Assembly (NCBI GenBank): GCA_976226885.1
Contig: OZ320314.1
Span: 63,240,001 to 63,304,000, forward strand
Reading direction: 5' to 3'
DNA: 64,000 bases
Source of the DNA: Iphione sp. A-MEVVRFRX5
Lineage: Eukaryota
Below, piece by piece: positions 1,605-48,471 of the stretch. The notes below the pieces were generated by a model. It made no database searches. It worked only from the letters and a program-made list of their open reading frames with translations, and had not been told where the DNA came from. Within the stretch, counting starts at the first letter, position 1, and the number at the start of each line of letters is the position of its first letter. The position numbers were made by a program, and so were the translations under genes.

Positions 1605-1706
1605 GAGTAGACACATACACAAATACACACAAATATTATTGAAATAAACAAATATTGAAAGTACGCATTCAGGATGTACACTAAACAGTTGCTGGGAGGG
1701 TGGAGG

Positions 1707-1966: not shown

Positions 1967-1976
1967 CAAGCCAGGT

Positions 1977-2876: not shown

Positions 2877-2967
2877 CCGTCGCTTGAGACTCTCTGTAGT
2901 GATGTCCTCCCTCTGCCTCTGTGCTGCGCGCTCGGCCAGCCCTCGAAGCCTGGGGTCTGTAATAGAC

Positions 2968-5696: not shown

Positions 5697-5706
5697 TTTT
5701 AGGCGT

Positions 5707-5823
5707 CTTTTCGAGCTCAGTGCAAACGACCAACTGACGCCTCGTAGGGCGGGAACGCCCTTATTTAAGAATGCACTGAGTCGCCCCCTGGTGTAATAAG
5801 ATCGTACCCTACAGTACGACACC
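5707..5823 (-). repeat. Ngaro split direct repeat A1
   Basis: Copy of 1707-1822; contains a TATA-like TTAAATA about 70 nt upstream of the ORF1 ATG. Confidence 0.88.
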
Positions 5824-14143: not shown

Positions 14144-14547
14144 GATGTTCTATGTCACATATTTCGACCGGGTTTGTATGTGATATCATCAGATGTGCTA
14201 TCGTAATGATTTGATTGAAAATGATGGTGATGAAAATGATAACAGTGTAGATATGATGATCCGATATTTTGTCGATAGATGGATGAAATCAAAGATGGTT
14301 CAAACGAAAGATAAGATATATGGCGTGCCCTCCCGGAAAACCTGTTTTTGACAGTTAAGCAAAAAGTTTGCAAATATTCCAGTATATTCAAGGACAAAGT
14401 GAAATATACTTCATGGCTAGTACAATGCATATCATGACATCAAGTATTAGTCAATGTACAGACGCGGTAACAGTTTTAAGCAGCAACAGAGCGTGTTAGT
14501 CAAAGAGTTCTTTTCTGACAATTTATCAAGGTCACTGAATGAGTTAC

Positions 14548-15315: not shown

Positions 15316-15413
15316 GTCATGTGACGCTCTGTGGTCACCCAGTGCATGTCTATAAATAGCGTCTCACGCTATGCTGTTTCCATGTTTGGATCCTCGTCCT
15401 CACATAGTTCCCC

Positions 15414-18543: not shown

Positions 18544-18765
18544 CAGGGGGGGTCACCTATTCTGGTGAAGCGTTATTGCCTATTTTAATTCAGCACGAAA
18601 CGTTATTGGCCCCTCTAAATAAGCGCTAAGCGTTATGAAGTATTTACTGGTGAAGCGTTATCAAAGAATTAATTGTTGGTGAAGTGTTATTTGATCTAGT
18701 TTTCAGCGTTATGGATGTTTTGAATTCTTGGTGAACCGCTATTGGGTACCCCCTGACCCCCCCTG
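18544..18765. mobile_element. hAT-like MITE
   Basis: TIR CAGGGGGGGTCA / TGACCCCCCCTG; 8-bp flanks TGTATACA / TGTATACT; internal repeats of GAAGCGTTA. Confidence 0.65.
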
Positions 18766-20639: not shown

Positions 20640-21155
20640 TTAAAGACAGTACTTAATCATGTAGGTTGATGTCTGCTCTCGCTGACATAGCGCGCACATA
20701 TTCGTAATGTAATGTTTCTCGACTTGGCCATCGGCATACTCCTGGATCAGTAGGTTCAGAGCAGACTGATCATATCGGTGGCAATCATGATAGGTATTAT
20801 ACCTGTCTTTTGTAAAAACGCACAAAGCGGTGCTGCCATATGGCGCAATGCAGTCAGTTATCATGGCACATCTCACCCACCAATTCAGCACATTTTTAAC
20901 TAGCGAGCGGGTGTTCATAATTGCAATAAAATTAGCACCTAGCATTCCTGTTCTCCGGACCCTCGAATCATCCATTGGCAAGTATGCGTACTGGTTTGGA
21001 TGCGTAGTTGCAAAAGCAGAGTGGCCAACACTCTCCAACGTTATGATGGCGGACCGTCCAACCATCTCCGCTAACTGCTGCAGCAGCTTTGGACAAGTGG
21101 CTCGGATGGATGAGTCAAAGTAGAAAACTGGCTGTTTGTATAACAAGAGAACTTC
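20640..21155 (-). CDS. Host DUF1647-family gene, last coding exon (4 of 4)
   Basis: Acceptor CAG at 21158-21156; VFYFDSSIR, THP, WWVRCA...CIAP.GS, HRYDQSALNLL; phase 0 with the previous exon. Confidence 0.85.
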   Translation of the reverse strand, partial: EVLLLYKQPVFYFDSSIRATCPKLLQQLAEMVGRSAIITLESVGHSAFATTHPNQYAYLPMDDSRVRRTGMLGANFIAIMNTRSLVKNVLNWWVRCAMITDCIAPYGSTALCVFTKDRYNTYHDCHRYDQSALNLLIQEYADGQVEKHYITNMCALCQREQTSTYMIKYCL

Positions 21156-21200
21156 CTGTTGGGAGAAGAAAATATTTTCCACAATTAAATTATTAGATTA

Positions 21201-33976: not shown

Positions 33977-35572
33977 TTATTGTCTAATGTCAGATTTGAA
34001 ACTGTTCATTATGTAGAGTGTATCATAGTGTGTAATTGTTTGGTTTGAGGCATTCCATGCTTGTATTATTCTCTGATGGGTGCATTTTGATATATGTGGA
34101 TTGTTGATGTTGTGGGCAGCAATAAATTTATCCTGACTGTCATCATGAAGATTATAGGTGGTTGACCTTAGTGTGCAGTGTTTCTGAAGGAATTGTGGGT
34201 GGAGTTTGAGAGTGGCTTTATATGCTTGGATCAATAGGTGCAGATTGATTCTTTCTCTCACTGTCATCATCCCTGATAGTTCATGGACTTCAATTGTTGG
34301 GGTCAATATATCAAGACTCATTGCACATTCAAGTCCCCTGTTCTGGAGCTTTTGTATCTGTTGAAAGATAGAGAGTGGGACTATCAACCAAATAATGTCC
34401 AGATAGTTCAATGTATGGTATGATTAACATTTTGTAGAGCATAAGATTGGTTCTTGTGTCAAGGAATTTATTGATTATGCTCAATGAGGTTATTTGATGA
34501 CTAACTGTTTTGATCACATGTTGTGCATGAAATTTCATAGTAAGATTGTTGTCCAGGTGTAAGCCAAGATATTTTTATGTAGAGCATTGTTCTACAGAGG
34601 TAGCATTCAGTAACAGTATACAGTTATTCCTGATTGTGTTGATGTTTCTCGAAGTGCGAAAGACCATGTATTTGGTTTTACTAATATTGAGCACCAATTT
34701 GTGGTAGGTTAGCCAGTCATAGATTCGGTATAGGGTAGTTTGTGCAATTTTGACACTTTTGTTGATATTTTTATGACTGATCAATATTACTGTGTTGTCT
34801 GTATACATACTGTAGTGAAGATCCCCAATTGCTTTGTGGATATAATCTATATAAAGGATGAACATTATTGGGCTGAGTACTGATCCTTGGGGTACTCCTG
34901 CCATTATGTTCATCTTGTGTGATAGTGTGCCATTCACTCAGGTTGTCTGTTGTCTATTTTGTAGATAGTCTTTAAGAAGATTAAGAGGTGGTCCTGTAAT
35001 TCCAATTTGCCTAAACTTGTCTAGGAGCATTGTTTGAGATATAGTGTTGAAAGCGTTACTAATGTCCAAGAAAAGTGCTATTGTTTGAAGTTTATTTGCA
35101 TTGTTCTGTCTGATTGTGTCTGTAACGTACTGCACCATGGTAAAGGTTGAGTATCCAGATCTGTAGCCTCCTTATCTATTTGATAATATATTGTTTTGGT
35201 TTATATATTGCATTAGTTGAGTAGGTATAATTTTCTCTAGTAATTTGTGCGTAAGGGGAGCACTGAGATAGGTCTGTAGTTGATAGCTTGAGATCTGTCC
35301 CCTCCTTTGAACAGTGCAGTTACTATTGCTTGCTTCCAGGATGTCAGTATATTCTGAATCTGCAGGATTCTGTTTAACAGAATAGTGAGTGGATGTACTA
35401 GCATCTGAGTTAAATTTAAAATTATTTTCATTGGTATACCATCTATGCATGAGGGTTTGGTTGCCGAAAAGGTTTTGAGTATTTTGGTAACTTCTTCAGT
35501 ATCTGTAGGCTGTAGTGTATCAAAAACTGAGTCTAGTTTGTTGAAGTAATATTGGGTATTAGGTTTCGGTAC
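33977..35572 (-). pseudogene. Decayed CR1/L2-group LINE, RT part (3' fragment)
   Basis: Frameshifted fragments YRPISVLP, FLDISNAFNTI, GVPQGSVLSP, YTDNT, NISKTKYM; continues at 47559 across the Gypsy insertion. Confidence 0.85.
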
Positions 35573-35586
35573 TGTAATGTGATAAT

Positions 35587-36207
35587 GTTACCTGTGGCAC
35601 CACAGCCACTCGTATTGTACTTAGCGAACTCTAAGACTTAGTAGTAACATTGCCTGCGGCACCACAGTTGTGTAGATTGTAGTAGTAACGTTGCCTGTGG
35701 CACCACAGCCACTCGTGTTGTACTCTAAGACGTAATAGTAATACTGCCTGTGGTTCCACAGCCACTTGTGTTGCACTTGATGAACTCTAAGACTTAGTAG
35801 TAACGTTGCCTGTGGCACCACAGTTGTGTAGATCGTAGTAGTGACGTTGCCTGTGGCACCACAGTCACTTGTGTTGTACTTGATGAACTCTAAGACTTAG
35901 TAGTAACGTTGCCTGCGGCACCACAGTTGTATAGATTGTAATAGTAACGTTGCCTGTGGCACCACAGCCACTTGTGTTGTACTTGATGAACTCTAGGACT
36001 TAGTAGTAACGTTGCCTGTGGCACCACAGTCACTTGTGTTGTACTTGATGAACTCTAGGACTTAGTAGTAACGTTGCCTGGGGCACCACAGTCACTTGTG
36101 TTGTACTTGGTGAACTCTAAGACTTTAGTGCATGTGTACTGGAGAGTAAGCTTAGGGCCGCCTGTGGCACCACAGTCATTTATGCTGGATGGCCTGTGGT
36201 ACCACAG
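35587..36207 (+). repeat. U3 tandem array: 12 units with palindromic core CTGTGGCACCACAG, mostly alternating 62-bp and 41-bp units
   Basis: Units counted by eye; 11 units in the 3' LTR (about 46536-47094). Confidence 0.9.
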
Positions 36208-36354
36208 GCATATAGGATGTCTAAGGTCACCTTGAACCCTGGATGGCAAGGCACCTGCAATATGATTGGTAGACAGAAAAAAATCTTTGGAATGTTGTAG
36301 CCTTTTTATTCCATGACTGATACATTGTACTAATCACATGACCAGGAGTTTGGC

Positions 36355-36390
36355 TATAAATATGGGCCCGGTGTGGCCAATAAAACAGTT
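36355..36390 (+). promoter_or_regulatory. LTR core promoter: TATAAAT (36355), AATAAA (36379), Inr-like CAGTT (36386)
   Basis: TATA to Inr spacing about 32 nt; poly(A) signal lies just upstream of the predicted start. Confidence 0.6.
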
Positions 36391-36672
36391 TGCACTTGGA
36401 CCTCACTAGTGGACCTTGTTGATTTGGGATGTAACAAACCCACTTGGATTACCTAGGGTTGGCACTTGGATGTAACCGCACTGGGACTACAGTGAAGTAA
36501 CTGAGACAGGATAGCACTAGACATAGCTGGATCTACCAAGTGGGAGATTTAACAGAGAATTATCCTGGAGTTAGGACTTGGATAAAATATCACTGGAATT
36601 ATAGTGGAGTAACTAAGCGAGTTGGACTTAGTTGGATTACACCAAGTGAGGAAGTCAGCCATTAAATTACAC

Positions 36673-36690
36673 TGGTGGCAGCGGTGGGAT
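36673..36690 (+). promoter_or_regulatory. Primer-binding site complementary to tRNA-Leu (AAG/UAG)
   Basis: TGGTGGCAGCGGTGGGAT, 18 nt complementary to the recalled tRNA-Leu 3' end ATCCCACCGCTGCCACCA. Confidence 0.88.
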
Positions 36691-36703
36691 AAACATTGAC
36701 AAC

Positions 36704-37543
36704 ATGGCTACACACTACGTGGCAGTGGACGACGAAGTGCAGATTCGGGTTCCTAGCCCAGCACCAGCGGGCAGCGATGAGGAAGAAGGTGAGCAATTTG
36801 AACTGGCCCCTGAGCAGCCATTGAAAATGAATGCCATGAAGCCAGAGCGCTTCGATGGTAAGACTGTGGATTGGGACAGTTGGATAGGCCAATTCACGGA
36901 GTGGGCGGATGCTTGCAAGTGGAATGAGAATACCCGCTGTTCCGCATTAACACTATCACTCACTGGCCCAGCGCGAATGTATTATGGGGATCTACCGCCA
37001 GAGGATAAGCGGGATTATGGGTCACGGGTCACTGCGTTGGAGCGACGGTTCGGCAGGCGACGCGACCGAGTGGTGGCCATGCAGAAGCTCTCCAGTATCC
37101 GTAGGCAAAAGGACGAGGACGTTCGCGACCTGGCCGATCGAGTGAGGCGTCTGGTGAGGAGTGCATACCCTGATGTGTCCGGGGAAACCCGGGAGCTGGC
37201 AGCCGTAGCCGCTTTTCAACGATCTTTGGCCGATTCTCTTCATCTCAAGTGCCTGGAGGCGAAGTGTACAACTTTGGACGCCGCTGTACAGGTGGTGGAG
37301 ACCCAAGAGCGCTTCGTCGCTAAGAAGATACAGGTAGTACAGGCCCCCTCAACTCCGGCGTGGACAAAACCTATGGAGGAACTTACCAAGGAGCTCGCGA
37401 AAATCCGAGAGGAGATGCAGACCCGAGAGGAAGTACGAAACAGGAAGCCACGCTACACAAAATGCTTCCAGTGCGGGCAGGACGGCCATTTTCGACGGGA
37501 CTGTCCTGAGTTGCAGGGAAACGGATCCCAGTCGGCCAACTAG
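36704..37543 (+). CDS. gag: Gag (279 aa) with CCHC zinc knuckle
   Basis: PERFDG, WDSWIGQF, LSLTGPA, DLADRVRRLVRSAYP, CFQCGQDGHFRRDC. Confidence 0.93.
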   Translation: MATHYVAVDDEVQIRVPSPAPAGSDEEEGEQFELAPEQPLKMNAMKPERFDGKTVDWDSWIGQFTEWADACKWNENTRCSALTLSLTGPARMYYGDLPPEDKRDYGSRVTALERRFGRRRDRVVAMQKLSSIRRQKDEDVRDLADRVRRLVRSAYPDVSGETRELAAVAAFQRSLADSLHLKCLEAKCTTLDAAVQVVETQERFVAKKIQVVQAPSTPAWTKPMEELTKELAKIREEMQTREEVRNRKPRYTKCFQCGQDGHFRRDCPELQGNGSQSAN

Positions 37544-37550
37544 GCCGGGA
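37516..37550 (+). promoter_or_regulatory. Predicted -1 ribosomal frameshift signal (G GGA AAC plus downstream stem)
   Basis: Slippery heptamer in gag frame; -1 frame is open for 23 codons into pol; CGGCC-AACTA-GGCCG hairpin follows. Confidence 0.75.
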
Positions 37551-37584
37551 TGGTACGACTGGAATAACACTAACGGGGACTACA

Positions 37585-40500
37585 ATGGAACCAGGTCAGG
37601 GACCACGGCTGAAGGTGAGCCTTGATGGAAGGTCAGTAGAACTGTTGATTGACACTGGTGCTGAGGTATCCATTGTTAACCCCCGTGTGGTCCCTGGCCT
37701 GGAGGGAGAAGGGTCCCCGACACGTATCACTGGGGTGGGGGGACATGTTATCCCTACCTTAGGGCATCATACCTGTGTACTGGAGATAGCAGGGGAGAGC
37801 TTCAGTCATTCCTTCCTAGTAGCGGAGGTGGAAGAGGATGGGATCTTGGGAAGCGACTTTCTGTGTCAACACCGCGCAGTGATTGATCTTGCTAGAAAAG
37901 AGATAGCTCTGAACCGGTGCTGCCGAGTGGCTAGACAGGAGACAGAGGTACGAGTGGCCCATGACGTGACATTACCGGCTGGGGCAGGGCTAGCTGTGCT
38001 CATTAACCACCATGGAGAGACACCCCTGATGGTAGAAGGACTATTAGAGTCACAGTGGAGACAGGGGGTTGTTGGGATGAGATGCCTTGTTGAGTCGACC
38101 TTGCCCATGTGGAATACCACCGACACAGAGATATTCCTGAGGCAGGGGACACAGATTGCTGTGGGGGTGCCTACCCAACCCTGGGAGGAAATCCCCGCGA
38201 GCCCCAAGAAAGGTGTGTATGCAATCAGGAAGGCAGTAGCGGATGTCATCCAAGAGTTGGTGAAGCCTACGGATGGGACCCTTACATCTGAACAGCAGGG
38301 GCAACTGAGAAGATTACTAAGAAAACATAGCCCTACTTTTGCCCGGGACCGAGATGACTTGGGGCGCACAGATGTGGTGCAGCACCGCATTTTCACTGAG
38401 GACCGCCATCCTATAAAACAACCCCCGAGGAGACTCCCCCTTTCCAAGAGACAGGAAGAGCGGAAACTAGTTAAGGAGATGAAAGATCTGGGGGTAATCG
38501 TTGAAAGCAGCAGTCCTTGGTCTAGCCCCGTGGTGATGGTAAAAAAGAAGGACGGCACCACTCGCTTCTGTGTCGACTATCGAAAACTAAATGGAAAGAC
38601 GAAGGTTGACGCCTACCCCTTGCCCAGGATCGATGACTCCCTGAGTACCCTGGCGGGGGCCAAATACTTTTGCTCACTTGACCTGGCGTCCGGCTACTGG
38701 CAAGTCAGGATGCACCCAGAAGACCAGGAGAAAACGGCGTTCTCCACCTCGGTTGGGTTGTATGAATTTACGGTAATGCCATTCGGTCTGATTAACGCCC
38801 CAGCAACCTTCGAACGACTAATGGATACAGTGTTGCGCGGCTTGACCTGGGAACAGTGCTTAGTGTACTTGGATGACATTTTGGTCTTTGGGAGGACCTT
38901 CCAAGAAACCATGGCTCGTTTGGATCGGGTGCTGACACGGCTAGCTGCGGCTGGGCTCAAACTCAAGCCCTCTAAATGTCAGCTGTTCCTGCAAGAGATA
39001 GGTTTCCTGGGGCACATCGTCTCACCGAAGGGGGTGGCTACCGATCCCAGTAAGACGAAGAGTATAGAAGAGTGGCCGACCCCGACCTGCACGACAGAAG
39101 TGCGAGCCTTCCTGGGTCTCTGTTCTTACTACCGCCGGTATGTGCCACACTTCGCCAATGTGGCCGCTCCTCTGCACAAGTTGACCGGTACTAAGACGCG
39201 ATTTACCTGGGGAGACCCGGAAGAGGCAGCATTTCGGGATCTGAAGGCGGCTCTAGCGTCTAGCCCAATACTGGGATACCCACAGCCAGAGGGGCGGTAC
39301 TTCCTGGATATCGACGCCAGCAATGTGGGCATTGGAGCTGTACTAGCCCAGAGGCAGGAGGAACGAGAGGTGGTACTGGCCTACTACAGTCGTAGCTTGA
39401 GCGAGACAGAGCGACGGTACTGCGTGATGCGTAGAGAGCTGCTCGCTGTGGTGGCGGCCCTGAAACACTTCCACTTTTACTTGTACGGACAGGAAGTCAC
39501 CGTGCGGACCGATAATGGGGCGGTAAGTTGGCTGCGCCGTATTAAAGACCCAGAGGGGCAGCTAGCCCGTTGGCTGGAACGTGTGGGACAATACAACATC
39601 CAACTGGAGCATCGAGCGGGTCGCTTGAATGCAAATGCGGACGCCCTCTCCCGTAAAACCTGTAGGCAATGCAAACAAGAACACCTAACGGAAGACGCAG
39701 TGATAGAAAAAGTACGAGCTGTGACTCGCAGCCAGTCAACGGGAACTGGACATCCGGAACTACGGATGGCCCAACTCCAAGATGAGGAGGTAGGGCCAAT
39801 CCTTAGAGCTATGGAATCGGACCCCCAACAGCCTGCCTGGGAGTGGGTGGCGCCAGCATCGGCTGCAACGAAGAGCCTTTGGAGACAGTGGAGCCGACTT
39901 ACCGTGAGCGGAGGTCTGCTGCAGAGGAAGTGGACAGGACTTGGCGGGGAGCCTTCCCGGCTGCAGGTGGTCTTGCCAGTCGCCCTTCGAGAAAAAGCCT
40001 TCAAGGAAGTACATGCGGGCCAGATGGGAGCCCACCTAGCTGCCGAACGAACTACCTACCTGGTAGCCCTCGCCTATTACTGGCCGGGGATGACAGGGAA
40101 CATCGCAGCCTGGTGCAGAGACTGTCACTGTGCTCTGCTCAACCGGGATCCTTTCCGGCCGCAGGTGCCTCTGAAAACTTACCTGTCGGGGGAACCCATG
40201 GAACGATGGTCAATGGATGTGGCCGGACCCTTGCCTCTAACTGCGCGAGGAAACCGCTACATCCTGATGGTGGGGGATCACTTCACAAAGTGGCTTGAGG
40301 CGTTCCCCCTACCAGACCAGAAAGCCCCAAAAATCGCCCGGATCCTAGCCGAGGAGGTAATCGCTCGCTATGGTTGTTTCCACGAGCTGCACAGTGACCA
40401 GGGAACAAATTTCTGCAGCGAAATCATCACGGCCCTCTGTGACTATCTGCACATCAAGAAGACCAGGACCACCCCGCGACACCCGCAAAGCGACGGGTTC

Positions 40501-41124
40501 ATTGAACGTAGCTTCCGGACCTTGGGGAAGATGATCAAAGCACATTGCCACGAGAGCCAAGATGAGTGGGACACAGCACTCCCTTTCCTCATGATGGCGT
40601 ATAGGGCTTCACCACAAGCTAGCACCGGGTACACCCCGAACTACCTGATGTTCGGACGTGAGGTTACTCTTCCGGTGCATGCGATGGACGGGCTTCCGTC
40701 GAAAAACCCAGAGGTGGAAGACTTACCTGACCCGGTAGGGGAAATGTTGCGACGACTTCAAGAGGCATATGGTAGAGTCCGGAAGAACCTGAGGACGGCG
40801 GCTCGATCCCAGGCCCGAGCTTATGATCGGAGAATGAAGGGGGAAGCTTTGAAGGCGGGGGCGGTGGTATGGCTCCATGAGGCACAGCCACCAAAAGGGA
40901 GAAGCCCGAAGATTCACTTCCCCTGGTCAGGGCCGTGGCTAGTTACCCGAGCTCTGGATGATGAACGACTGATTGTGCAACGCTCTAAACAAGCGAGGCC
41001 GAGAGTAGTACATCGGAATCGGTTACGGTTGTATCGCGGGGAACGATTACCCCGGTGGATCATCTCCTGGCGGAGGAAGGCGGAGCTCTCCGCCCCAGAT
41101 GGCGGTGGCAGGGTCTCCGTATAG
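37585..41124 (+). CDS. pol: Pol: protease, RT, RNase H, integrase (1179 aa from first ATG; probably expressed as gag-pol)
   Basis: LIDTGA, YLDD, DIDASNVGIG, ADALSR, H..QMGAH...C, DVAGP / SDQG / ERSFR, PWSGPW. Confidence 0.96.
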   Translation: MEPGQGPRLKVSLDGRSVELLIDTGAEVSIVNPRVVPGLEGEGSPTRITGVGGHVIPTLGHHTCVLEIAGESFSHSFLVAEVEEDGILGSDFLCQHRAVIDLARKEIALNRCCRVARQETEVRVAHDVTLPAGAGLAVLINHHGETPLMVEGLLESQWRQGVVGMRCLVESTLPMWNTTDTEIFLRQGTQIAVGVPTQPWEEIPASPKKGVYAIRKAVADVIQELVKPTDGTLTSEQQGQLRRLLRKHSPTFARDRDDLGRTDVVQHRIFTEDRHPIKQPPRRLPLSKRQEERKLVKEMKDLGVIVESSSPWSSPVVMVKKKDGTTRFCVDYRKLNGKTKVDAYPLPRIDDSLSTLAGAKYFCSLDLASGYWQVRMHPEDQEKTAFSTSVGLYEFTVMPFGLINAPATFERLMDTVLRGLTWEQCLVYLDDILVFGRTFQETMARLDRVLTRLAAAGLKLKPSKCQLFLQEIGFLGHIVSPKGVATDPSKTKSIEEWPTPTCTTEVRAFLGLCSYYRRYVPHFANVAAPLHKLTGTKTRFTWGDPEEAAFRDLKAALASSPILGYPQPEGRYFLDIDASNVGIGAVLAQRQEEREVVLAYYSRSLSETERRYCVMRRELLAVVAALKHFHFYLYGQEVTVRTDNGAVSWLRRIKDPEGQLARWLERVGQYNIQLEHRAGRLNANADALSRKTCRQCKQEHLTEDAVIEKVRAVTRSQSTGTGHPELRMAQLQDEEVGPILRAMESDPQQPAWEWVAPASAATKSLWRQWSRLTVSGGLLQRKWTGLGGEPSRLQVVLPVALREKAFKEVHAGQMGAHLAAERTTYLVALAYYWPGMTGNIAAWCRDCHCALLNRDPFRPQVPLKTYLSGEPMERWSMDVAGPLPLTARGNRYILMVGDHFTKWLEAFPLPDQKAPKIARILAEEVIARYGCFHELHSDQGTNFCSEIITALCDYLHIKKTRTTPRHPQSDGFIERSFRTLGKMIKAHCHESQDEWDTALPFLMMAYRASPQASTGYTPNYLMFGREVTLPVHAMDGLPSKNPEVEDLPDPVGEMLRRLQEAYGRVRKNLRTAARSQARAYDRRMKGEALKAGAVVWLHEAQPPKGRSPKIHFPWSGPWLVTRALDDERLIVQRSKQARPRVVHRNRLRLYRGERLPRWIISWRRKAELSAPDGGGRVSV

Positions 41125-41899
41125 GAAGCCGGAATAAGGAGATGGGCGAAGAAGACGTTCGGGACGGGTGTCCTGGAGACTCACATATGAGTCTGAAGAT
41201 AGGAGGACAAACATCCTGGCTGCGCTCGAAATGGTTCGTGGGGAGCGGTGGACGGCCCGGAGCCACTGAGGCTCGAAATAACCACCAGAGGCGTCACAGG
41301 TGGCCTGAGGGTTTATCGACCGGCAACGACCTGTGGGAGGGGAGGCCTCCCTGGTAGCACTCGAAAAGTCCGCGGGGCGATTAGGGAACGCCCGGAAGCG
41401 CATGTCACGCTCAAAAATTCCCTGGAGGAGGATGAACATCCTGGGGTTTACCCGGCCCAAAAGTTCATGGAGGAGGGCGGACCTCCTGGAGTTGCTCGAA
41501 AGGCCTGGCGAGGGAAACGAACACCCTGGAGCGCGCAAAAAGTTTGTGGAACGGGTAGGGAGAGAACGTCCCGGAGGCCGTGGAGCTCGAAACGGTTCGG
41601 TGTAAGAGACGCGGAGAGATCGGAGGATGATGTCGGCATCATTCCCCCGGGAAACATTATGACAGGCAGAAGAAGTAATGAAGCCTAGTTGCGGTATGTG
41701 TCCTCTGGACGGGAGAGAAGACCAAGCTCCAGTCCTTGTCCTCTGGACGGGGGGGTGGCCGAGTTGCCGTCCTTTTCCTCTGGAAGGAGCGAAGCACTCG
41801 GGATGGTGGACGACGGAAACCGAGCTGCGGTCCTTGTCCTCTGGGCGGGCCGTGCTAGAACAAAAGAAAGACGGAGAGACAGTTGAACTATGAACAAAT

Positions 41900-41905
41900 T
41901 TTAAT
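41900..41905 (-). terminator. Predicted poly(A) signal (ATTAAA) of the antisense accessory gene
   Basis: Minus-strand ATTAAA about 125 nt after the stop, followed by a U/GU-rich tract. Confidence 0.5.
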
Positions 41906-42028
41906 TCAAATCACCAACAATGGAACGAAGTGGGTAACAACTGCGAGTGGCGGACGATGAAAGTCATATATATACAAGTTACGGTCGCGGGATGAGTCTA
42001 TGTACAGATGGACGAGCGGAAAGTCCAC

Positions 42029-42728
42029 TTAAGAAGAGGAGGGAGGGGCATCCTCATCCTCGTCCTCGTCGGAGATTAGGATGGGATGCCATGCCAGGTC
42101 CCCGGGCTGCAGGTCGGGGTACCACGACGACAGGAAATCGGCCGGCCAGGAGGAGAGGGAAGCCCGCCCGAGGACTGGCCCCACATCAGGAGAACTGGAT
42201 GGGGCAGGCGAGCGGGATGGCGTGTCCACCGGCGAGCTCGTGTCCTCCGGGGAAGGCGACCGAGGACAGGTGGCGGAGGAGGTAGTGCTCGTAGAGTCAA
42301 CCTCGGTGGACGAGGCCACACCGCTAGAACAGCTATATGAGGGCGAGGCGCTGACGTCAGAGCTCGAGGAGGGCCAGGGGTCCAGCTGACTGGAGGTCAT
42401 CGAACAATGAGACCAGTCGTCCTCATCGGTGTGGCTGGATTCGACGTTGTCGAGGGAGGCGAGGTAGCTGGATACCTCTCCCAAACCGAGGTCGGGGGAC
42501 ACCGAGTCCTGGCGGGACCACAGAGGATCGTCGCTGCGGGGAAGAACTGGCTGGATCACCGGGTGCACAGAGATGCCCACCCAATGATCCGGGCCGTACA
42601 ACCGAATGTTGCCCGGAGCTGGGATGTACAGCGGATGGGTGGACATGGGATGCAACCCATACACCCTTATCGTAGGCCCAGGGGTGCCCACATCAATAAA
42701 CCGATAATACGGATCCGGGGGCTGAGAT
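42029..42728 (-). CDS. Antisense accessory gene, exon 2 (Pro/Tyr-rich segment then Ser/Asp-rich acidic tail)
   Basis: Acceptor T28-AACCCTTCTCTTGTTCCTCTTTCTAG at 42729; phase matches exon 1; open to the stop at 42029. Confidence 0.62.
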
Positions 42729-42750
42729 CTAGAAAGAGGAACAAGAGAAG

Positions 42751-42786
<36 letters not shown>

Positions 42787-42890
42787 GAACTCACCTGGAA
42801 CCTCCAAAGGAACATCAGTAACCGGCTTCAGGAAATCCAACATGGCAACTGGTAACTGGAGAAGGCCCCTAGCTGCATGTAAGTGCCTAC

Positions 42891-43024
42891 CTATCCTCCA
42901 CGGGGGGATAACCTTTCTGCTCTTCAGGGAAGTAATCCTCTCCCACAGGAGGACACCTCTCCTGATCTTCTGGTAGAAAGGCCCCTCCCTGGGAGAGGCC
43001 TGCAAGGTACGCTGGTAGTTCCAT
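42891..43024 (-). CDS. Antisense accessory gene, exon 1 (MELPAYLAGLSQGG...PPVEDR)
   Basis: ATG 43024 (alternative 43051); donor AG|GTAGGC at 42890; spliced ORF 277 aa. Confidence 0.6.
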
Positions 43025-43054
43025 GGGTGTGTACTGTCGGACGTCTAACATCGG

Positions 43055-43090
43055 ACTGACGGGTGACCATCGGTCGCACGCTCTTATATA
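43055..43090 (-). promoter_or_regulatory. Antisense core promoter: TATATAA (43090-43084) and Inr TCAGT (43059-43055)
   Basis: TATA starts 33 nt upstream of the Inr A; ATG 33 nt further downstream. Confidence 0.62.
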
Positions 43091-43108
43091 GCGAACGGAT
43101 AGAATTGA

Positions 43109-43914
43109 CTGGGGAACCGCAGTCGAGCGACAAACTGCGTAATCGTGCCTTGACAATACGACTGCGGAACCACAGCGAACAGATGGAATCGACTGGGGAA
43201 CCGCAGGCGAGCGGGAAACTGCGTAATAGCGCATTGATAATATGACTGTGGAACCACAGCGACATGGAGCATACGACAACAAGACTGCGGGGGCGCAGGC
43301 CGAGGGGACACCTTACCCCTGATACAGCCGACCATACCTTAAGAGGAAGCAGAACAGGAATTCGTGGGCTGTGGTACCACAGTCGAGGAACGACTCGGTG
43401 ACTGGGGACCCACAGTCGAGGAGGGGGGAATCCCGGAAGCGGACAACCCAAACATCCGCTAGCCTCGTTGTCGTTCTTGGGGAAGCCCTCCTGCGCGTTC
43501 GGGGAAGAGGAGCGTTTACTGTTCGAGGAAGAACTGATCGTAGAGAAGAAGACTTCCAAAAAGGAGGAGGAGAAAGACGGGCCACGAAGCAGAGGCAACT
43601 GCGGAACCACAGCGAGAGAGGAAATGCCGCGTTGAACACCAGAGGGAGGAGAATTGACCAGCCTCCTACGAACGGCGGCCGACTTCGTGGCGACTGCGGT
43701 CCCGCAGTGAGTAGCGGCTGCGGCCAACCTCCGTAAGTAAGTAACTGTGGAACCGCAGGGACAGTCGACAGAGGGGGACGGCCTATGACAACTGAGTTAC
43801 GGACCGAAAGTTGCCGATTTTTCTACAGACGGCGGCCGGCTTCGTGGCGACTGCGGTCCCGTAGTGGGTAGCGAACGGCCAACCTCCGTAGGTAAGACGA
43901 CTGCGGAACCGCAG
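43109..43914. promoter_or_regulatory. Internal array of about 11-12 palindromic CTGBGG-NN-CCRCAG sites between the divergent accessory genes
   Basis: Copies at 43109, 43162, 43193, 43246, 43369, 43402, 43599, 43694, 43745, 43851, 43901 (degenerate 43285); embedded in about 84-bp and about 157-bp duplications. Confidence 0.8.
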
Positions 43915-43972
43915 TGATAGTCGACAGGGGAACGGCTTATGACAACTGGGGGACCCCATACGACTGTTGAGG

Positions 43973-45493
43973 ATGCCTCGTGTCAGAATTGAAACGCCCC
44001 GGCTTCCAATTATATGGAAGACAGAGGATCCCCTGCCCCCGGGGGCTGAGTTTTGTGAACTGTGCCTGCCCCGGAAACGTCCTTTCTTTAGGGGATTCTC
44101 GTTTGACCGCCACAAGGAGGAGAAACATCAGGGGAAACGGGGACGAGATCTCCTGTGTCTGTGGTGCCCGAGCGCCATTACCGATGAACACTACTGGGTG
44201 ACGCACCAGCGTCGTTATCACCCGTGGGTTGTTGCTTTGGGGTTAGCGGAAAAACCCTATCGTGTGTTGTGTGATGCTGCTCCCCATGGGGGGAAGACGG
44301 TGCAAGCCCCAGACGACGAACTGACAGACATCCTGGTGCGAGCCCGACAACTGAGACAGGACGGGTGGTATATGAGTGAAGAGGAGGCCATGACCCATCT
44401 GGCTGGGTGTCCACGACGAGCAGCCCCACCCCCGGTCCCGCGACAGATACGACTGGGGTCTCCCCCTCGTGACGAGCAAGACATGGAAGAGGAGGAGGGG
44501 GGCCCTGGGGCTCCCATGGGGGGAGGGGAGCCCGAAGTACCCGCGGGTCCCGACCTACCAGACCTGGAGGGGGCTGAGGGACCGGCACCTGGCCCACCCG
44601 CTCCCCATCAACTCGAGGGGGGTGACATACCTGACGGGGGGGATGACCCCCCAGCGCCGGCCCCAGAGGAACCTGACTACCCCGTGGCCCCTGACGAAGC
44701 TCCAGTGCAGCCAGGAGACCCTCCAGGCCTCAACGACAGACAGGACGGGGCGGAAATGGACGACTTGGCCTTGGTAATGGGGCATTTGCGGGCTGCAGTT
44801 GAGCCAGGGGCAGCGGCCGCGGCCGCCCAGCCCGGCCTCCCGCTTGGCGATGGAGAACAGGCCGCACCCGCCCCGACATCGCCGACGCTACCCGAAGGAC
44901 GTCTAGCCCAGAAGGTTAGACACTTTCTACCCCCCGACTACGTCGAACCGGTGTCACGACGCATGCGGGATGTCCTAGATGGGCTAGTCTGGCCATACAC
45001 CCCGGCTCTGAGGGCTACCATGCTTCCGGCTGTCGTGCGCCTCCCGTCGTTCATCACTTGGCCCCCGCGAAGGTGGGAAGAAATGTCAGGTGCCCAACGT
45101 ATGATGGCCAGCGCATCTTTGGCTTGGGTATTACACCTTGCTGAGGGGGACGGGCCTCCTCCCGACTCCCTCTTAGAGCCTTTGCGCAGGCGGCCCACCC
45201 TACTTCTGCCCGCCGTAGCCTTGCCCGACCACCAGGACTGGGGACGACTGGGGTCGGTCTACGACCTTCATAACTCGACTGTGGACGCAGCACAGAGCGC
45301 TTTGGAGGCTATGCGGTGGGGACCAAGTAAAACACGTATATACGATGTGCGGTGGCAGAGGGAGGTCAGGGAGGTCACAACGCGACGACAAGCCACCCAA
45401 CCGACGGTACACTACGTATGCTTAGGGGCCCCTCCATGCCAGCACCCGGTGGCTGGGGGCGACGTGGGTCCCGCCTTACCACCCGTTGTTTAG
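43973..45493 (+). CDS. Accessory ORF3: two C2H2 zinc fingers, acidic/Pro-rich middle, unrecognised C-terminal domain (506 aa from ATG)
   Basis: CELC-x15-H-x4-H and CLWC-x12-H-x4-H; long open frame; no signal peptide or clear TM helix. Confidence 0.75.
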   Translation: MPRVRIETPRLPIIWKTEDPLPPGAEFCELCLPRKRPFFRGFSFDRHKEEKHQGKRGRDLLCLWCPSAITDEHYWVTHQRRYHPWVVALGLAEKPYRVLCDAAPHGGKTVQAPDDELTDILVRARQLRQDGWYMSEEEAMTHLAGCPRRAAPPPVPRQIRLGSPPRDEQDMEEEEGGPGAPMGGGEPEVPAGPDLPDLEGAEGPAPGPPAPHQLEGGDIPDGGDDPPAPAPEEPDYPVAPDEAPVQPGDPPGLNDRQDGAEMDDLALVMGHLRAAVEPGAAAAAAQPGLPLGDGEQAAPAPTSPTLPEGRLAQKVRHFLPPDYVEPVSRRMRDVLDGLVWPYTPALRATMLPAVVRLPSFITWPPRRWEEMSGAQRMMASASLAWVLHLAEGDGPPPDSLLEPLRRRPTLLLPAVALPDHQDWGRLGSVYDLHNSTVDAAQSALEAMRWGPSKTRIYDVRWQREVREVTTRRQATQPTVHYVCLGAPPCQHPVAGGDVGPALPPVV

Positions 45494-45629
45494 AGAGCCG
45501 ATAGCCATATGTTCTACCCTAGTAGGGCGTGATGGGTGACACAAATTGTTATGATCGGATGTTTGATGCTAAGCGCTGTTATCATTGTTGACTGTGATGT
45601 ACCCCTACCGTTGTTACTGCAATTAACTT

Positions 45630-46445
45630 AATCATTACCTCCTAAGGAGGCTTGGCCAGATTACCCCGTGGATAGATGATCATTACCTCCCGTGGAGGCT
45701 TGACCGGATTACAGTAAGGATGTTAAATGAAAAGGGGACTGTACCCCACAAAAAAAACTGTTATTGGACGATGCATAAGCTGTGATTGGTTGTTGTTATA
45801 ATACTGTGTTGTTGCCTAAGTGGATCACTACCTCCTAGGGAGGCTTTGCCAGAGTGTAGTAAGGATGTTACAGGAAAGGACAGAAGGGGACTGTACCCCA
45901 CAAAAAGAGTGTTAAGGAGTTGTTTTCAACCAATGTATAAGTAGTGATCATTGATCGTATGCTGTTGTGATTTTTTTTAGATGAATCAATTACTACCTCC
46001 TAAGGAGGCTTTGCCAGATTGGACCCCAGGGGGGGTAAGAGTAGGTATCCCAGATTGTTTTGATAAGGAATGTCTGTGATCTTTTGTTTATTGTGATATC
46101 TTGTGTTACCTAGACAATTACTACCTCCTACGGAGGCTTTGCCAGATTCATCCACATTTACTCAAGAGTTGTTAGAGTGAGGATGTTAACAGTTAAAAAA
46201 GGGGGACTGTACCCCCACAAAAAGAGTGAGGCTCTTACAGTTACTGGGATGTTTATCTGTGATCTTTTGGGTTATTGTGATATCACTACCTCCTAGGGAG
46301 GCTTTGCCAGATTCAATGATTAACTTGTATACTGAGGAAAAAATTTGCTGCTTAGGTGACCATTACCCCCTATGGGGGCTTTGCTAAATTTACCAGTATT
46401 TATCCAAGGAGTTAGTAGATCAACTGTTATCCTCTACGGAGGCTT
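45630..46445 (+). repeat. Dispersed array of 8 CCTCC-NNN-GGAGG dyads and 3 GGGG-ACTGTA-CCCC dyads upstream of the PPT
   Basis: Dyads at 45638, 45686, 45831, 45996, 46124, 46289, 46366, 46431; second type at 45734, 45886, 46201. Confidence 0.85.
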
Positions 46446-46508
46446 ATGTTGGCTCAGGATGTACTTCTCAGGGAAACAGGTTTTCACTTCCCCCGGTAGA
46501 CTATTTTT

Positions 46509-46521
46509 AAGGTGAGGAGAG
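46509..46521 (+). promoter_or_regulatory. Polypurine tract
   Basis: AAGGTGAGGAGAG directly before the 3' LTR TGTAATG. Confidence 0.75.
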
Positions 46522-47558
46522 TGTAATGTGATAATGTTACCTGTGGCACCACAGCCACTCGTATTGTACTTAGCGAACTCTAAGACTTAGTAGTAACATT
46601 GCCTGTGGCACCACAGTTGTGTAGATTGTAGTAGTAACGTTGCCTGTGGCACCACAGCCACTCGTGTTGTACTCTAAGACGTAATAGTAATACTGCCTGT
46701 GGTTCCACAGCCACTTGTGTTGCACTTGATGAACTCTAAGACTTAGTAGTAACGTTGCCTGTGGCACCACAGTTGTGTAGATCGTAGTAGTGACGTTGCC
46801 TGTGGCACCACAGTCACTTGTGTTGTACTTGATGAACTCTAAGACTTAGTAGTAACGTTGCCTGCGGCACCACAGTTGTATAGATTGTAATAGTAACGTT
46901 GCCTGTGGCACCACAGCCACTTGTGTTGTACTTGATGAACTCTAGGACTTAGTAGTAACGTTGCCTGGGGCACCACAGTCACTTGTGTTGTACTTGGTGA
47001 ACTCTAAGACTTTAGTGCATGTGTACTGGAGAGTAAGCTTAGGGCCGCCTGTGGCACCACAGTCATTTATGCTGGATGGCCTGTGGTACCACAGGCATAT
47101 AGGATGTCTAAGGTCACCTTGAACCCTGGATGGCAAGGCACCTGCAATATGATTGGTAGACAGAAAAAAATCTTTGGAATGTTGTAGCCTTTTTATTCCA
47201 TGACTGATACATTGTACTAATCACATGACCAGGAGTTTGGCTATAAATATGGGCCCGGTGTGGCCAATAAAACAGTTTGCACTTGGACCTCACTAGTGGA
47301 CCTTGTTGATTTGGGATGTAACAAACCCACTTGGATTACCTAGGGTTGGCACTTGGATGTAACCGCACTGGGACTACAGTGAAGTAACTGAGACAGGATA
47401 GCACTAGACATAGCTGGATCTACCAAGTGGGAGATTTAACAGAGAATTATCCTGGAGTTAGGACTTGGATAAAATATCACTGGAATTATAGTGGAGTAAC
47501 TAAGCGAGTTGGACTTAGTTGGATTACACCAAGTGAGGAAGTCAGCCATTAAATTACA
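46522..47558 (+). repeat. 3' LTR (1037 bp)
   Basis: Matches the 5' LTR minus one 62-bp unit; followed by the GTAC TSD. Confidence 0.95.
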
Positions 47559-48471
47559 GTACTTTACTGTGTTATCTGCCCTATGTAAGTGAAATGTTCG
47601 TTGAGTATATTTGCTATTGCAGTGTTGTCAATAATAGTGGTGTTGATTGTTTTCAGTTATCTAATTGTCAGGTCATCGTCTTTCTTGTTTGGTAGCAGTG
47701 TTTTGAGTTCTTTCCAATACTTTGCTGGTTTGTACTTGTATTGTGCTAGTCTGGATTGTATATAATTCCTTTTAGCTCATCTCATTTTGGAATTTAGTCG
47801 GTTTCTTAATTTCCTTGAAATTGCCAAATGTTTAGGGTCCTTAGATAGTTTATATTGTTTCAAAATATATTTTTTTTGCCTTCTTTGTTGAGTGATGTCT
47901 TTATCTATTCATTTCCGCATGTTAATTGGGATTCTCTTGTATTTGAAAGGGGCATGAGTGTTTAACTTGCTTTGATAATATGATATATTTGTTCCCAGTG
48001 TTGTTCAGTAGTGGTGTTGGTGTTGATGTCTGTAAGTGCTGTTGATATTTCTTTGGCAAAAGTTTCCTGATTAAAGAAGGTGTAGTCACAGACATAGATT
48101 GTTTCATATTTCAGTTTGACATGAGGATTTCTTCTAGTGTATGTCCAGAAGTGGTCGCTGAGATTTATTGAGATAGTGCCTGATTTCTCATATTTCACAG
48201 GTGTATTTACTAATATAAGATCAATTCTTGTAGAACAGGTTATTGTAATTCGAGTTGGTGTGTGAATAAGATTTTTGAATCCAAGTGAATTTTCCAAAGT
48301 TTTCAATTTCCTAAATTGGGGTGTTCTAGTCTTGTTACAGTCAATGTTAAAGTCTCCTAGTATAATTGTTTCATTACTATGACTGTCAATTAAGTTCAGG
48401 ACATTCTGGAGTTTACTAAAACATGCATCTATATTCCTGCTTGGTGGTCTGTATAGTGTTAATATAAACAA
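47559..48471 (-). pseudogene. Decayed LINE ORF2, endonuclease part (5' fragment of the element split by the Gypsy insertion)
   Basis: LYRPP, ILGDFNI, PTRIT, RIDLI, SDH motifs. Confidence 0.85.

What the first reader, a model, noticed from the sequence alone, without database searches (positions are those of the whole stretch)
35573..47558. Gypsy element with a complex-retrovirus-like accessory module
After an intact gag-pol lie 5.4 kb that are not env: a spliced antisense gene with its own TATA/Inr/poly(A), a central palindrome array, a sense C2H2 zinc-finger ORF and a hairpin array before the PPT. The near-identical LTRs and perfect TSD show that the whole unit transposed recently. Inference: an internal bidirectional promoter drives element-encoded regulators, similar in logic to the foamy-virus internal promoter with Tas or the HTLV antisense gene HBZ. 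I know of no description of this layout in an invertebrate Gypsy element, but could not search.
Basis: partly seen in the sequence, partly recalled or inferred. Interest (0 to 1): 0.88.

Follow-up and report, generated by a model that had tools for sequence, protein, structure and literature searches.

The report
Young Gypsy retrotransposon with accessory genes
This is a very recently inserted, intact Gypsy-type retrotransposon whose long tail holds a conserved but unannotated zinc-finger gene, a probable backward-facing gene, and an internal copy of the control sites found in its terminal repeats, so it resembles complex retroviruses in layout although no expression has been shown.

Summary
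An 11,986-bp Ty3/Gypsy element lies at 35573-47558. Its LTRs differ by one mismatch and one 62-nt repeat unit, it has a 4-bp duplication (GTAC), and gag and pol are intact. A 5.4-kb pol-3'LTR region follows; it is neither env nor a nested insertion.

ORF3 (43973-45493) is a real gene by length, codon usage and periodicity. It belongs to a family I could not find annotated: two classical C2H2 fingers, a variable linker, and a conserved C-terminal domain. I found this family in five related Gypsy families from two other assemblies. In one of them it evolves at dN/dS 0.19.

A 14-bp palindrome occurs 12 and 11 times in the LTRs, 10-11 times at 43109-43914, and nowhere else in 64 kb. A minus-strand TATA/Inr abuts that internal array. 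Behind it lie intron-like signals, a stop-free and strongly 3-periodic 232-codon frame, and a poly(A) signal. This is a probable antisense gene, but it has no relatives and no expression data.

The "bidirectional promoter with element-encoded regulators" reading is plausible but untested, and ORF3 could equally be made by splicing. Accessory and antisense ORFs in Gypsy elements are already known (Retand, Tor, Cer1, Burro). I rate this a new variant of a known kind, of moderate interest.

The parts
35569..35572 (.). Left target-site duplication (GTAC)
   Evidence: The same 4 bases follow the 3' LTR at 47559-47562.
35573..36671 (+). 5' LTR (1099 bp, TG..CA)
   Evidence: It aligns to the 3' LTR with 1 mismatch in 1037 bases plus one extra 62-nt unit.
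35592..36207 (.). U3 tandem-repeat array carrying 12 copies of the 14-bp palindrome
   Evidence: periods of 62, 103 and 156 nt.
36355..36384 (+). LTR TATA box (36355-36362) and AATAAA (36379-36384)
   Evidence: Start and poly(A) sites are inferred, not observed.
36673..36690 (+). Primer-binding site (starts TGG, 1 nt after the LTR)
   Evidence: Read directly from the sequence. The tRNA was not identified.
36704..37543 (+). gag (279 aa, intact)
   Evidence: Pfam zf-CCHC at 4.8e-6 and a weak Retrotrans_gag hit. 3-periodicity chi2 is 29, reached by 0 of 1000 shuffles.
37585..41124 (+). pol (1179 aa, intact): protease, RT, RNase H, integrase
   Evidence: Pfam RVP, RVT_1, RT_RNaseH, Integrase_H2C2 and rve. 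DTG and YLDD motifs are present. The frame is open from 37510 and overlaps gag by 34 nt in the -1 frame.
41200..41610 (.). Degenerate post-pol repeats (about 7 units ending in a CTCGAAA-like motif); non-coding
   Evidence: There is no 3-periodicity (chi2 4.9).
41900..43090 (-). Predicted antisense transcription unit. In order: TATA 43090-43083; Inr-like A 43057; ATGs at 43051 and 43024; exon 1 ending at 42891 (weak donor) or 42795 (consensus donor); acceptor AG 42730-42729; exon 2 from 42728 with a stop at 42031-42029; ATTAAA 41905-41900.
   Evidence: The exon-2 frame has 0 stops in 232 codons, and chi2 periodicity is 46.6, reached by 0 of 1000 shuffles. There are no homologues or Pfam hits. 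Expression was not observed.
42755..42782 (.). A28 run on the plus strand (T28 on the minus strand, inside the candidate intron)
   Evidence: No direct repeat of 8 nt or more flanks it as a TSD would. The only plus-strand AATAAA of the internal region lies 60 nt upstream of it.
43109..43914 (.). Internal array of 10 exact-pattern (11 relaxed) copies of the LTR-type 14-bp palindrome, built partly from 84-nt and 68-nt duplicated modules
   Evidence: Similarity to the LTR is limited to the palindrome core. The motif is absent from the 83 comparison loci then in hand.
43973..45493 (+). ORF3 (506 aa from the first ATG). C2H2 fingers at about 44054-44128 and 44156-44221; an acidic Pro-rich middle; a conserved C-terminal domain at about 44963-45286.
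   Evidence: Its 510 stop-free codons exceed all 300 shuffles. Codon usage matches gag-pol in its own frame only, and it is 3-periodic. For family evidence.
45635..46445 (+). Array of 8 units with a 5-bp palindromic core and a conserved 3' flank, in an AT-richer 3' untranslated region
   Evidence: Structure is not statistically supported.
46509..46521 (+). Polypurine tract
   Evidence: A purine run directly before the 3' LTR.
46522..47558 (+). 3' LTR (1037 bp) with 11 palindromes
47559..47562 (.). Right target-site duplication (GTAC)

Best explanation
This is a very young, apparently autonomous Ty3/Gypsy LTR retrotransposon. Its 5.4-kb pol-3'LTR region is an integral accessory module.

1. ORF3 is a real sense gene. 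It belongs to an unannotated family of Gypsy accessory proteins with two classical C2H2 fingers, a variable acidic linker and a conserved C-terminal domain. It is most likely a sequence-specific nucleic-acid-binding regulator.
2. An 0.8-kb internal array repeats the same 14-bp palindrome that builds the U3 tandem repeats. It most likely recruits the same dimeric factor, host or ORF3, as the LTR enhancer.
3. A minus-strand TATA/Inr promoter sits directly against that array. It heads a spliced antisense unit of about 1.15 kb that probably encodes a Ser/Pro/Asp-rich acidic protein.
4. Three further repeat arrays are non-coding cis elements.

Shown: the anatomy; the coding status and family membership of ORF3; the exclusive sharing of the palindrome between LTR and internal array; the periodic open antisense frame.

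Inferred: promoter activity, splicing, translation of the antisense frame, the DNA target of ORF3, and any regulatory loop.

My sub-estimates:
- ORF3 is a real, conserved gene: 0.9.
- ORF3 is a DNA-binding regulator: 0.6.
- The internal minus promoter is active: 0.55.
- The antisense frame is translated: 0.55.
- ORF3 is transcribed from the array rather than spliced from the LTR transcript: 0.35.
- ORF3 binds the palindrome: 0.2.
For: Element and youth.

ORF3 is coding:
- 510 stop-free codons against a shuffle maximum of 360.
- Codon score +0.149 in its own frame only.
- Periodicity chi2 25-39.

ORF3 family:
- Post-pol ORFs of L001, L002, L003, L085/L086 and L088 share the two fingers; seven of the eight zinc-ligand columns are invariant and the eighth differs in one decayed copy.
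- They also share a C-terminal domain with invariant columns, including a Trp-Pro-Pro motif.
- The window's C-terminal piece against the profile of four sisters gives hhalign probability 87%, E 3.7e-6.
- The finger profile hits solved tandem C2H2 DNA-binding fingers, with CTCF at 2.7e-10.
- L088 was found by profiles it was not part of, at 3e-6 and 3.6e-13.
- In the L001 family ORF3 has dN/dS 0.19 in both halves, against 0.03-0.06 for RT/RNase H and 0.23 for protease.

Palindrome: 33 matches against 0.02 expected, all in the LTRs or at 43109-43914.

Minus-strand unit:
- The minus TATA is one of only two TATA-like places in 9.85 kb of internal sequence. It abuts the array, mirroring the array-then-TATA order of the LTR.
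- The antisense frame has 0 stops in 232 codons and periodicity chi2 46.6, reached by 0 of 1000 shuffles. Flanking arrays score 5-8.
- Serine is encoded by both codon families.
- The weak donor keeps the frame from the upstream ATG into exon 2, read.
- ATTAAA lies 124 nt after the stop.

Not a nested insert.

The long 3' region of the sister family is constrained: nucleotide p-distance is about 0.20 against pS 0.5-0.6.
Against: - There are no expression data of any kind and no sister copy of this exact family. ORF3 and pol have no close relative in any collection searched.
- The length of the antisense frame is not unusual. 11 of 300 shuffles reach it, and the antisense strand of pol has a 236-codon open stretch.
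- The antisense frame's codon usage does not resemble gag-pol.
- Its product is low-complexity, which by itself can create periodicity.
- The plus frame in the same codon register has only 2 stops.
- The best (9/9) minus donor is not frame-compatible with the upstream ATG, and equally good minus donors occur by chance inside pol.
- The window's ORF3 alone matches no zinc-finger model. The finger assignment rests on the family profile.
- Sister elements have ORF3 without the palindrome array.
- Structure predictions were uninformative, at pLDDT 37-41.
Confidence: 0.55

Rival explanations
1. Only ORF3 is a functional accessory gene, and it is expressed from a spliced, LTR-driven subgenomic RNA as in retroviruses, errantiviruses and Cer1. 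The palindromes and other arrays are cis-acting elements of the genomic RNA or DNA: enhancer sites acting on the LTR, or packaging or export signals. The antisense 'gene' is a chance alignment of signals in GC-rich, purine-skewed sequence, or at most a non-coding antisense RNA.
For: - ORF3 follows pol closely in the sister families L002, L003 and L088 (after a second ORF in L088), with no palindrome array.
- There is a plus-strand donor-like site in early gag and an acceptor-like site at 43829.
- The antisense open frame is no longer than the one antisense to pol.
- Its codon score is negative, and it has no relatives.
- Perfect minus donors also occur inside pol.
Against: - The antisense exon-2 region is as 3-periodic as gag, pol and ORF3, while all four arrays are not.
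- It is the only frame of six there without a stop.
- The rare TATA sits exactly at the array edge with an Inr-like A 33 nt on.
- The ordered set TATA, Inr, ATG, donor, T-tract, acceptor, ORF, poly(A) signal lies within 1.2 kb.
Confidence: 0.3
2. Part of the post-pol region, the antisense unit ending at the A28 run, is foreign. It would be a transduced host gene fragment or a retro-copied, poly(A)-tailed RNA captured by template switching, carried along passively.
For: - The A28 run is at 42755-42782, with the only internal plus-strand AATAAA 60 nt upstream.
- An intron kept in antisense orientation is what a captured gene piece would look like.
- The sister families lack this segment.
Against: - No direct repeat of 8 nt or more flanks the A-run as a TSD would.
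- There are no internal TIRs or LTRs.
- The segment has the element's composition (GC 0.56-0.63, purine fraction 0.59-0.61) and not the host's 0.33-0.36.
- The 60-nt distance from AATAAA to the A-run is longer than usual.
- The whole unit transposed together, given the near-identical LTRs and the single TSD.
Confidence: 0.08
3. The region after pol, apart from the PPT, is decaying filler: a dead env or junk expanded by tandem duplication, with no function.
For: It contains many tandem arrays. Neither the window's ORF3 on its own nor the antisense frame has a database match.
Against: - ORF3 is intact, coding-like and conserved across five families, with dN/dS 0.19 in one.
- The insertion is very young with intact gag-pol.
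- The sister family's 3' region is more conserved than synonymous sites.
- No env-like or transmembrane signal remains.
Confidence: 0.04

Closest known systems
Plant Retand (Tat/Ogre-type) Ty3/Gypsy elements (PMC11963269; PMC7264820)
   Same: [quoted passage not shown] The same comparison with retroviral antisense genes is made for them in print.
   Different: They form a plant lineage. Their antisense ORF carries the TRP28 domain, which is not in the libraries on hand. No sense zinc-finger ORF3 is reported, and no sharing of an LTR motif with an internal array. Here the host is an unidentified AT-rich eukaryote, and the pol relatives that carry a source's name come mostly from animals.
Tor elements of Oikopleura dioica (PMC4402516)
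   Same: [quoted passage not shown] In some Tor elements that promoter lies in the intergenic space after pol.
   Different: The third gene there is env, a membrane glycoprotein, and the promoter was mapped by 5' RACE. Here the third gene is a zinc-finger protein, no start site has been mapped, and there is an additional antisense unit.
Cer1 of C. elegans and its CERV protein (PMC10309623)
   Same: An invertebrate Ty3/Gypsy element with an element-encoded non-structural regulator that acts on the element's own RNA.
   Different: CERV is made from a spliced sense mRNA and acts in nuclear export. No sequence relation to ORF3 or to the antisense product was found in any search, and no comparator was fetched.
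Foamy-virus internal promoter with its transactivator, and the antisense gene of HTLV-1
   Same: The logic only: a second promoter inside the element, an element-encoded nuclear regulator, and an antisense-strand gene.
   Different: No named hit to either protein came back from the Pfam, solved-structure or protein searches. The antisense product has no bZIP hit. The element is a Metaviridae-type retrotransposon without env. No letters of those proteins were used.
Accessory ORFs of bdelloid rotifer LTR elements and planarian Burro (PMC5408684; PMC6431247)
   Same: Animal Gypsy-like elements that have captured varied extra ORFs or domains and tandem repeats, some with zinc-binding motifs.
   Different: Those ORFs are env-like, GDSL lipase, DEDDy exonuclease, or domains fused into a giant polyprotein. 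A twin-C2H2 ORF3 with this C-terminal domain is not among them in the papers read.

Membership tests
Ty3/Gypsy (Metaviridae) LTR retrotransposon | Two LTRs with TG..CA ends flanked by a 4-6 bp target duplication | tested here: met
   1099- and 1037-bp LTRs and a GTAC duplication.
Ty3/Gypsy (Metaviridae) LTR retrotransposon | pol domain order protease, RT, RNase H, integrase (integrase after RT) | tested here: met
   RVP at residues 6-98, RVT_1 at 319-479, RT_RNaseH at 542-670, Integrase_H2C2 at 798-848, rve at 870-967.
Ty3/Gypsy (Metaviridae) LTR retrotransposon | gag with a CCHC knuckle; PBS after the 5' LTR; PPT before the 3' LTR | tested here: met
Ty3/Gypsy (Metaviridae) LTR retrotransposon | RT groups with a named Gypsy clade in a phylogeny | not tested
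   No named reference set was on hand. The best relatives are 39-47% identical and mostly unnamed; names given by sources include '412' and 'K02A2.6-like'.
Errantivirus-type (env-carrying) Gypsy element | A third ORF encoding a membrane glycoprotein (signal peptide, transmembrane anchor, env homology) | tested here: not met
   No env family hit. The highest 19-residue hydropathy in ORF3 is 1.09.
Chromovirus | Chromodomain at the integrase C-terminus | tested here: not met
   No chromodomain hit in pol.
Classical C2H2 zinc-finger proteins | CxxC..HxxxH ligand pattern matching a C2H2 profile | tested here: inconclusive
   The window's ORF3 has two patterns (7 of 20000 shuffles) but no Pfam or PDB hit on its own. 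The five-member family profile that includes it hits solved tandem C2H2 fingers at 2.7e-10, and sisters hit zf-Di19 at 3e-8.
Twin-finger ORF3 family of Gypsy elements (defined here) | Post-pol sense ORF with two N-terminal fingers and the conserved C-terminal domain, in the same order | tested here: met
   (probability 87%, E 3.7e-6).
Twin-finger ORF3 family of Gypsy elements (defined here) | Purifying selection on the ORF among copies of this element's own family | not testable with these tools
   No second copy of this family is in any collection. It was met in the L001 sister family, at dN/dS 0.19.
Retand-type architecture | Long pol-3'LTR region with antisense ORF and tandem arrays | tested here: met
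   This is likeness of layout only.
Retand-type architecture | Antisense ORF carries the TRP28 domain; RT belongs to the plant Retand lineage | not testable with these tools
   No TRP28 model is in the libraries on hand. The antisense exons have no Pfam hit at E up to 1.
Complex-retrovirus regulatory module (internal promoter with transactivator; antisense bZIP gene) | Sequence or fold relation of ORF3 or the antisense product to those viral regulators | tested here: not met
   No such named hit. The models were too poor for a fold search.
Complex-retrovirus regulatory module (internal promoter with transactivator; antisense bZIP gene) | Mapped internal transcription starts that respond to the element's own protein | not testable with these tools
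   This needs expression data from the host.

The most novel reading that the evidence does not exclude
A clade of animal-type Gypsy retrotransposons has evolved its own sequence-specific regulator. This is a twin-C2H2-finger protein that dimerises through its conserved C-terminal domain. In this element it would bind the 6+2+6 palindromes of both the LTR enhancer and an internal divergent promoter, giving a positive-feedback circuit with a second, antisense-encoded protein. That would be a complex-retrovirus-like regulatory programme arising independently in Metaviridae.
Probability: 0.15. Interest if true: 0.8.

Novelty: new variant of a known kind. Interest (0 to 1): 0.58.

Why it matters
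LTR retrotransposons are usually treated as gag-pol machines driven by host factors. A conserved, selected zinc-finger gene in several Gypsy families would show that these elements carry their own nucleic-acid-binding regulators. In one family it sits beside an internal copy of the LTR's binding sites and a probable antisense gene.

That would give a tractable, non-retroviral case for how accessory regulation arises, and for how antisense genes with introns persist in retroelements. It would also give annotators a new protein family to recognise. At present this ORF3 returns no hit for the window's copy in Pfam or in 1.84 billion protein representatives.

Tried and rejected
Searches and tests that led nowhere:
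- ORF3 alone against the word-indexed protein database, the 1.84-billion representative library, the exact-match gene index, JGI metagenome DNA and IMG/VR: nothing.
- Exact look-up of eight window proteins to name the host: none on record. Rfam and tRNA scans of the window: nothing. The host remains unidentified.
- pol relatives in metagenomes reach at most 54% identity over part of pol (47-49% over most of it), on short contigs without ORF3.
- The pseudoscorpion locus L084 is decayed and has no accessory similarity.
- AlphaFold2 of ORF3 alone and of its C-terminal part with a 9-row alignment gave pLDDT 37 and 41, so I ran no fold search.
- The C-terminal profile has no solved relative.
- The hairpin region folded as RNA gives z -0.10. 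Covariation in the 8 units rests on one compensatory pair, and 118 of 500 shuffles do as well.
- The LTR repeat 23-mer is absent from IMG/VR.

Readings rejected:
- Nested insertion.
- Internal array as a recent inverted LTR copy: only the 14-bp core is shared.
- env.
- ORF length as evidence for the antisense gene.
- Uniqueness of the consensus minus donor: two more lie inside pol.

No tool predicts the intron and no relative shares it. The exons were searched apart by reference, and only the reading-frame phase was worked out.

Full report
**1. The element**

Direct repeats define LTRs at 35573-36671 and 46522-47558. With the gap placed optimally they differ by one mismatch in 1037 aligned bases and by one extra 62-nt tandem unit in the 5' copy. 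The ends are TG..CA, and GTAC flanks both sides.

A TGG-initiated primer-binding site starts one base after the 5' LTR. A purine tract precedes the 3' LTR.

gag (36704-37543) has a CCHC knuckle. pol (37585-41124) has protease, RT, RNase H and integrase in Gypsy order, with DTG and YLDD motifs and no interruption. Its frame overlaps gag by 34 nt in the -1 frame.

The interior is GC-rich (0.53-0.68) and purine-skewed on the plus strand. The flanks are at 0.33-0.36 GC.

No other copy or fragment lies in the window.

**2. Is the 5.4 kb after pol part of the element?**

Yes, on present evidence.
- It keeps the element's composition and skew.
- It has no internal LTR, TIR or TSD.
- It carries a motif otherwise found only in the element's own LTRs.

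The pattern CTGBGG-NN-CCVCAG, a 6+2+6 palindrome, occurs 33 times in 64 kb against 0.02 expected. There are 12 in the 5' LTR, 11 in the 3' LTR, and 10 at 43109-43914 (11 with one relaxed copy). There are none elsewhere.

Beyond this core the LTR and the internal array are not alike. The array is therefore not a recently nested LTR piece.

The motif is absent from the 83 comparison loci fetched up to that point.

**3. ORF3 (43973-45493)**

It is coding by three independent measures.
- Its 510 stop-free codons exceed all 300 dinucleotide shuffles, whose maximum is 360.
- Its codon usage fits a gag-pol model in its own frame only: +0.149, with all other frames negative and pol itself at 0.231.
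- It is 3-periodic, with chi2 25-39.

It has no transmembrane-like segment and no family hit on its own. It has no relative in any large search.

Its plan is a basic N-terminus with two CxxC..HxxxxH patterns, an acidic Pro/Gly/Ala-rich middle (net charge -27), and a helical C-terminal part.

**4. ORF3 belongs to a family**

The closest full-length pol relative is P0002, at 47% identity. It sits in a 14.2-kb element (L001) with identical LTRs, a GC-rich interior in an AT-rich host, and 8 kb after pol that hold a 921-aa ORF and several tandem arrays.

That ORF matches the window's ORF3 at the C-terminus: 32% over 115 residues, above all 2000 shuffles. It also has two fingers at its N-terminus.

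The giant-LTR elements L002 and L003 (pol 46% identical over part of its length) and L088 (39%) come from a second assembly. Each carries a post-pol ORF of 433-554 aa with the same two fingers and the same C-terminal domain.

- In the five-sequence N-terminal alignment, seven of the eight zinc-ligand columns are invariant; the eighth differs in one decayed copy.
- The profile of that alignment finds solved tandem C2H2 DNA-binding fingers, with CTCF at 2.7e-10 and many others.
- Sister members reach zf-Di19 at 3e-8.
- The C-terminal alignment has 14 invariant columns, including a Trp-Pro-Pro motif.
- The window's piece against a profile of the four sisters gives hhalign probability 87%, E 3.7e-6.
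- L088 was detected by profiles built without it, at 3e-6 and 3.6e-13.
- A compact relative, L087 (pol 42%, 261-bp LTRs), has no such ORF.

Within the L001 family, comparison with two old copies (L085, L086) gives dN/dS 0.19 for both halves of ORF3. In those copies pol is split into at least three called fragments each. The comparison values are 0.03-0.06 for RT and RNase H and 0.23 for protease, at dS about 0.5-1.3.

The 4.2 kb after ORF3 in that family shows no coding signature in any frame. Yet it differs by only about 0.20 per site, against pS of 0.5-0.6 in the genes. It is therefore constrained non-coding sequence.

I found no paper in the held library describing a C2H2 ORF3 in Gypsy elements.

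**5. The antisense unit**

On the minus strand the signals lie in this order:
- TATA at 43090-43083. This is one of only two TATA-like places in the 9.85-kb interior, and it lies 19 nt from the first palindrome.
- An Inr-like A at 43057.
- In-frame ATGs at 43051 and 43024.
- A weak donor after 42891 and a consensus donor after 42795.
- A T28 tract.
- An acceptor AG at 42730-42729.
- A frame open to 42029.
- ATTAAA at 41905-41900.

The weak donor keeps the reading frame from the ATG into exon 2. The consensus donor does not, because a stop lies a few codons upstream in that phase.

Evidence for coding:
- The exon-2 region is as 3-periodic as the known genes (chi2 46.6, reached by 0 of 1000 shuffles). 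All four arrays and the LTR are not periodic, at 5-8.
- The minus frame is the only one of six there without a stop.
- Serine uses both codon families.

Evidence against coding:
- Open length is not informative. 11 of 300 shuffles reach it, and the antisense strand of pol does as well.
- The codon score is negative.
- The product is 21% Ser, 14% Pro and 10% Asp, and it has no relatives.
- The plus frame in the same register has only two stops.
- Perfect minus donors also occur inside pol.

**6. Other arrays**

- About seven degenerate units at 41200-41610.
- Short repeats at about 41700-41850.
- Eight units at 45635-46445 in an AT-richer 3' region, each with a 5-bp palindromic core and a conserved flank.

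The RNA fold energy of that last region equals shuffles, and covariation is not significant. I therefore call these conserved repeated sites, not demonstrated hairpins.

**7. How it most likely works**

The layout of array, then TATA, then start occurs twice: once in the LTR on the plus strand, and once internally on the minus strand. The most economical reading is that one dimeric factor recognising the palindrome activates both.

ORF3 lies 59 nt beyond the other end of the array. There are two routes to its mRNA.
- An internal plus-strand start, which has precedent in Tor (PMC4402516).
- Splicing of the LTR transcript. A donor-like site lies at 36789 and an acceptor-like site at 43829. This is the likely ancestral route, since in L002 and L003 ORF3 directly follows pol, and in L088 only a second ORF lies between.

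Two C2H2 fingers read about six bases, which is the arm length of the palindrome. A conserved C-terminal domain could dimerise. This makes ORF3 a candidate for the palindrome-binding factor. That is inference only, and sister elements carry ORF3 without this motif.

**8. Comparison with what is known**

[quoted passage not shown] Animal precedents for single features are:
- Tor, for the internal promoter (PMC4402516).
- Cer1 CERV, for a regulatory accessory protein (PMC10309623).
- Rotifer elements and Burro, for varied extra ORFs (PMC5408684, PMC6431247).

The likeness to the foamy-virus and HTLV modules is one of logic. No named hit to their proteins was returned.

What seems new is the ORF3 family itself, and the exclusive sharing of an LTR palindrome with an internal array set between two divergent units.

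**9. Limits and slips**

- The host is not identified. That it is an invertebrate is not verified; the pol relatives that carry a source's name come mostly from arthropods, an echinoderm, a sponge and fishes.
- I took no contig for human.

Noticed in passing
window 489-6633 (minus strand): A run of five ORFs that includes an RT (2.7e-16) and a weak tyrosine-recombinase match. It looks like a DIRS-type retroelement.
   Followed up: no
window 11369-16865 (minus strand): A LINE-type ORF with endonuclease and RT domains (924 aa) is preceded by two ORFs. One of them (15414-16865) carries a NADAR domain at 2e-20, which is an unusual partner for a LINE.
   Followed up: no
window 42695-42782: The only plus-strand AATAAA of the element's interior lies 60 nt before an A28 run. 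This could be a relic of a captured poly(A) tail or a cryptic sense poly(A) site. On the minus strand the same run serves as the pyrimidine tract of the candidate intron.
   Followed up: partly
window 43725-43731 and 43889-43897: Both copies of the 68-nt module in the palindrome array carry a plus-strand donor-like GTAAG, about 80 and 245 nt before the ORF3 ATG. A short leader exon for ORF3 is conceivable.
   Followed up: no
L002 999-7641 / 15833-22475 and L003 1633-6918 / 16335-21620: These Gypsy elements have giant LTRs of 6.6 and 5.3 kb, 99.9-100% identical and full of tandem arrays, in an AT-rich genome (ENA ERZ26052378). Minus-strand ORFs were called inside the LTRs.
   Followed up: partly
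L001 17607-21863 against L085: The non-coding 4.2 kb after ORF3 in the sister family is more conserved (about 80% identity) than synonymous sites of its genes (pS 0.5-0.6), with no coding frame. This is strong constraint of unknown kind.
   Followed up: partly
L088 14525-17232: This relative has two post-pol sense ORFs, of 347 and 554 aa. Only the second matches the twin-finger family, and the first is uncharacterised.
   Followed up: no
L087 16897-17169: A weak THAP-domain ORF lies just outside a compact ORF3-less relative.
   Followed up: no
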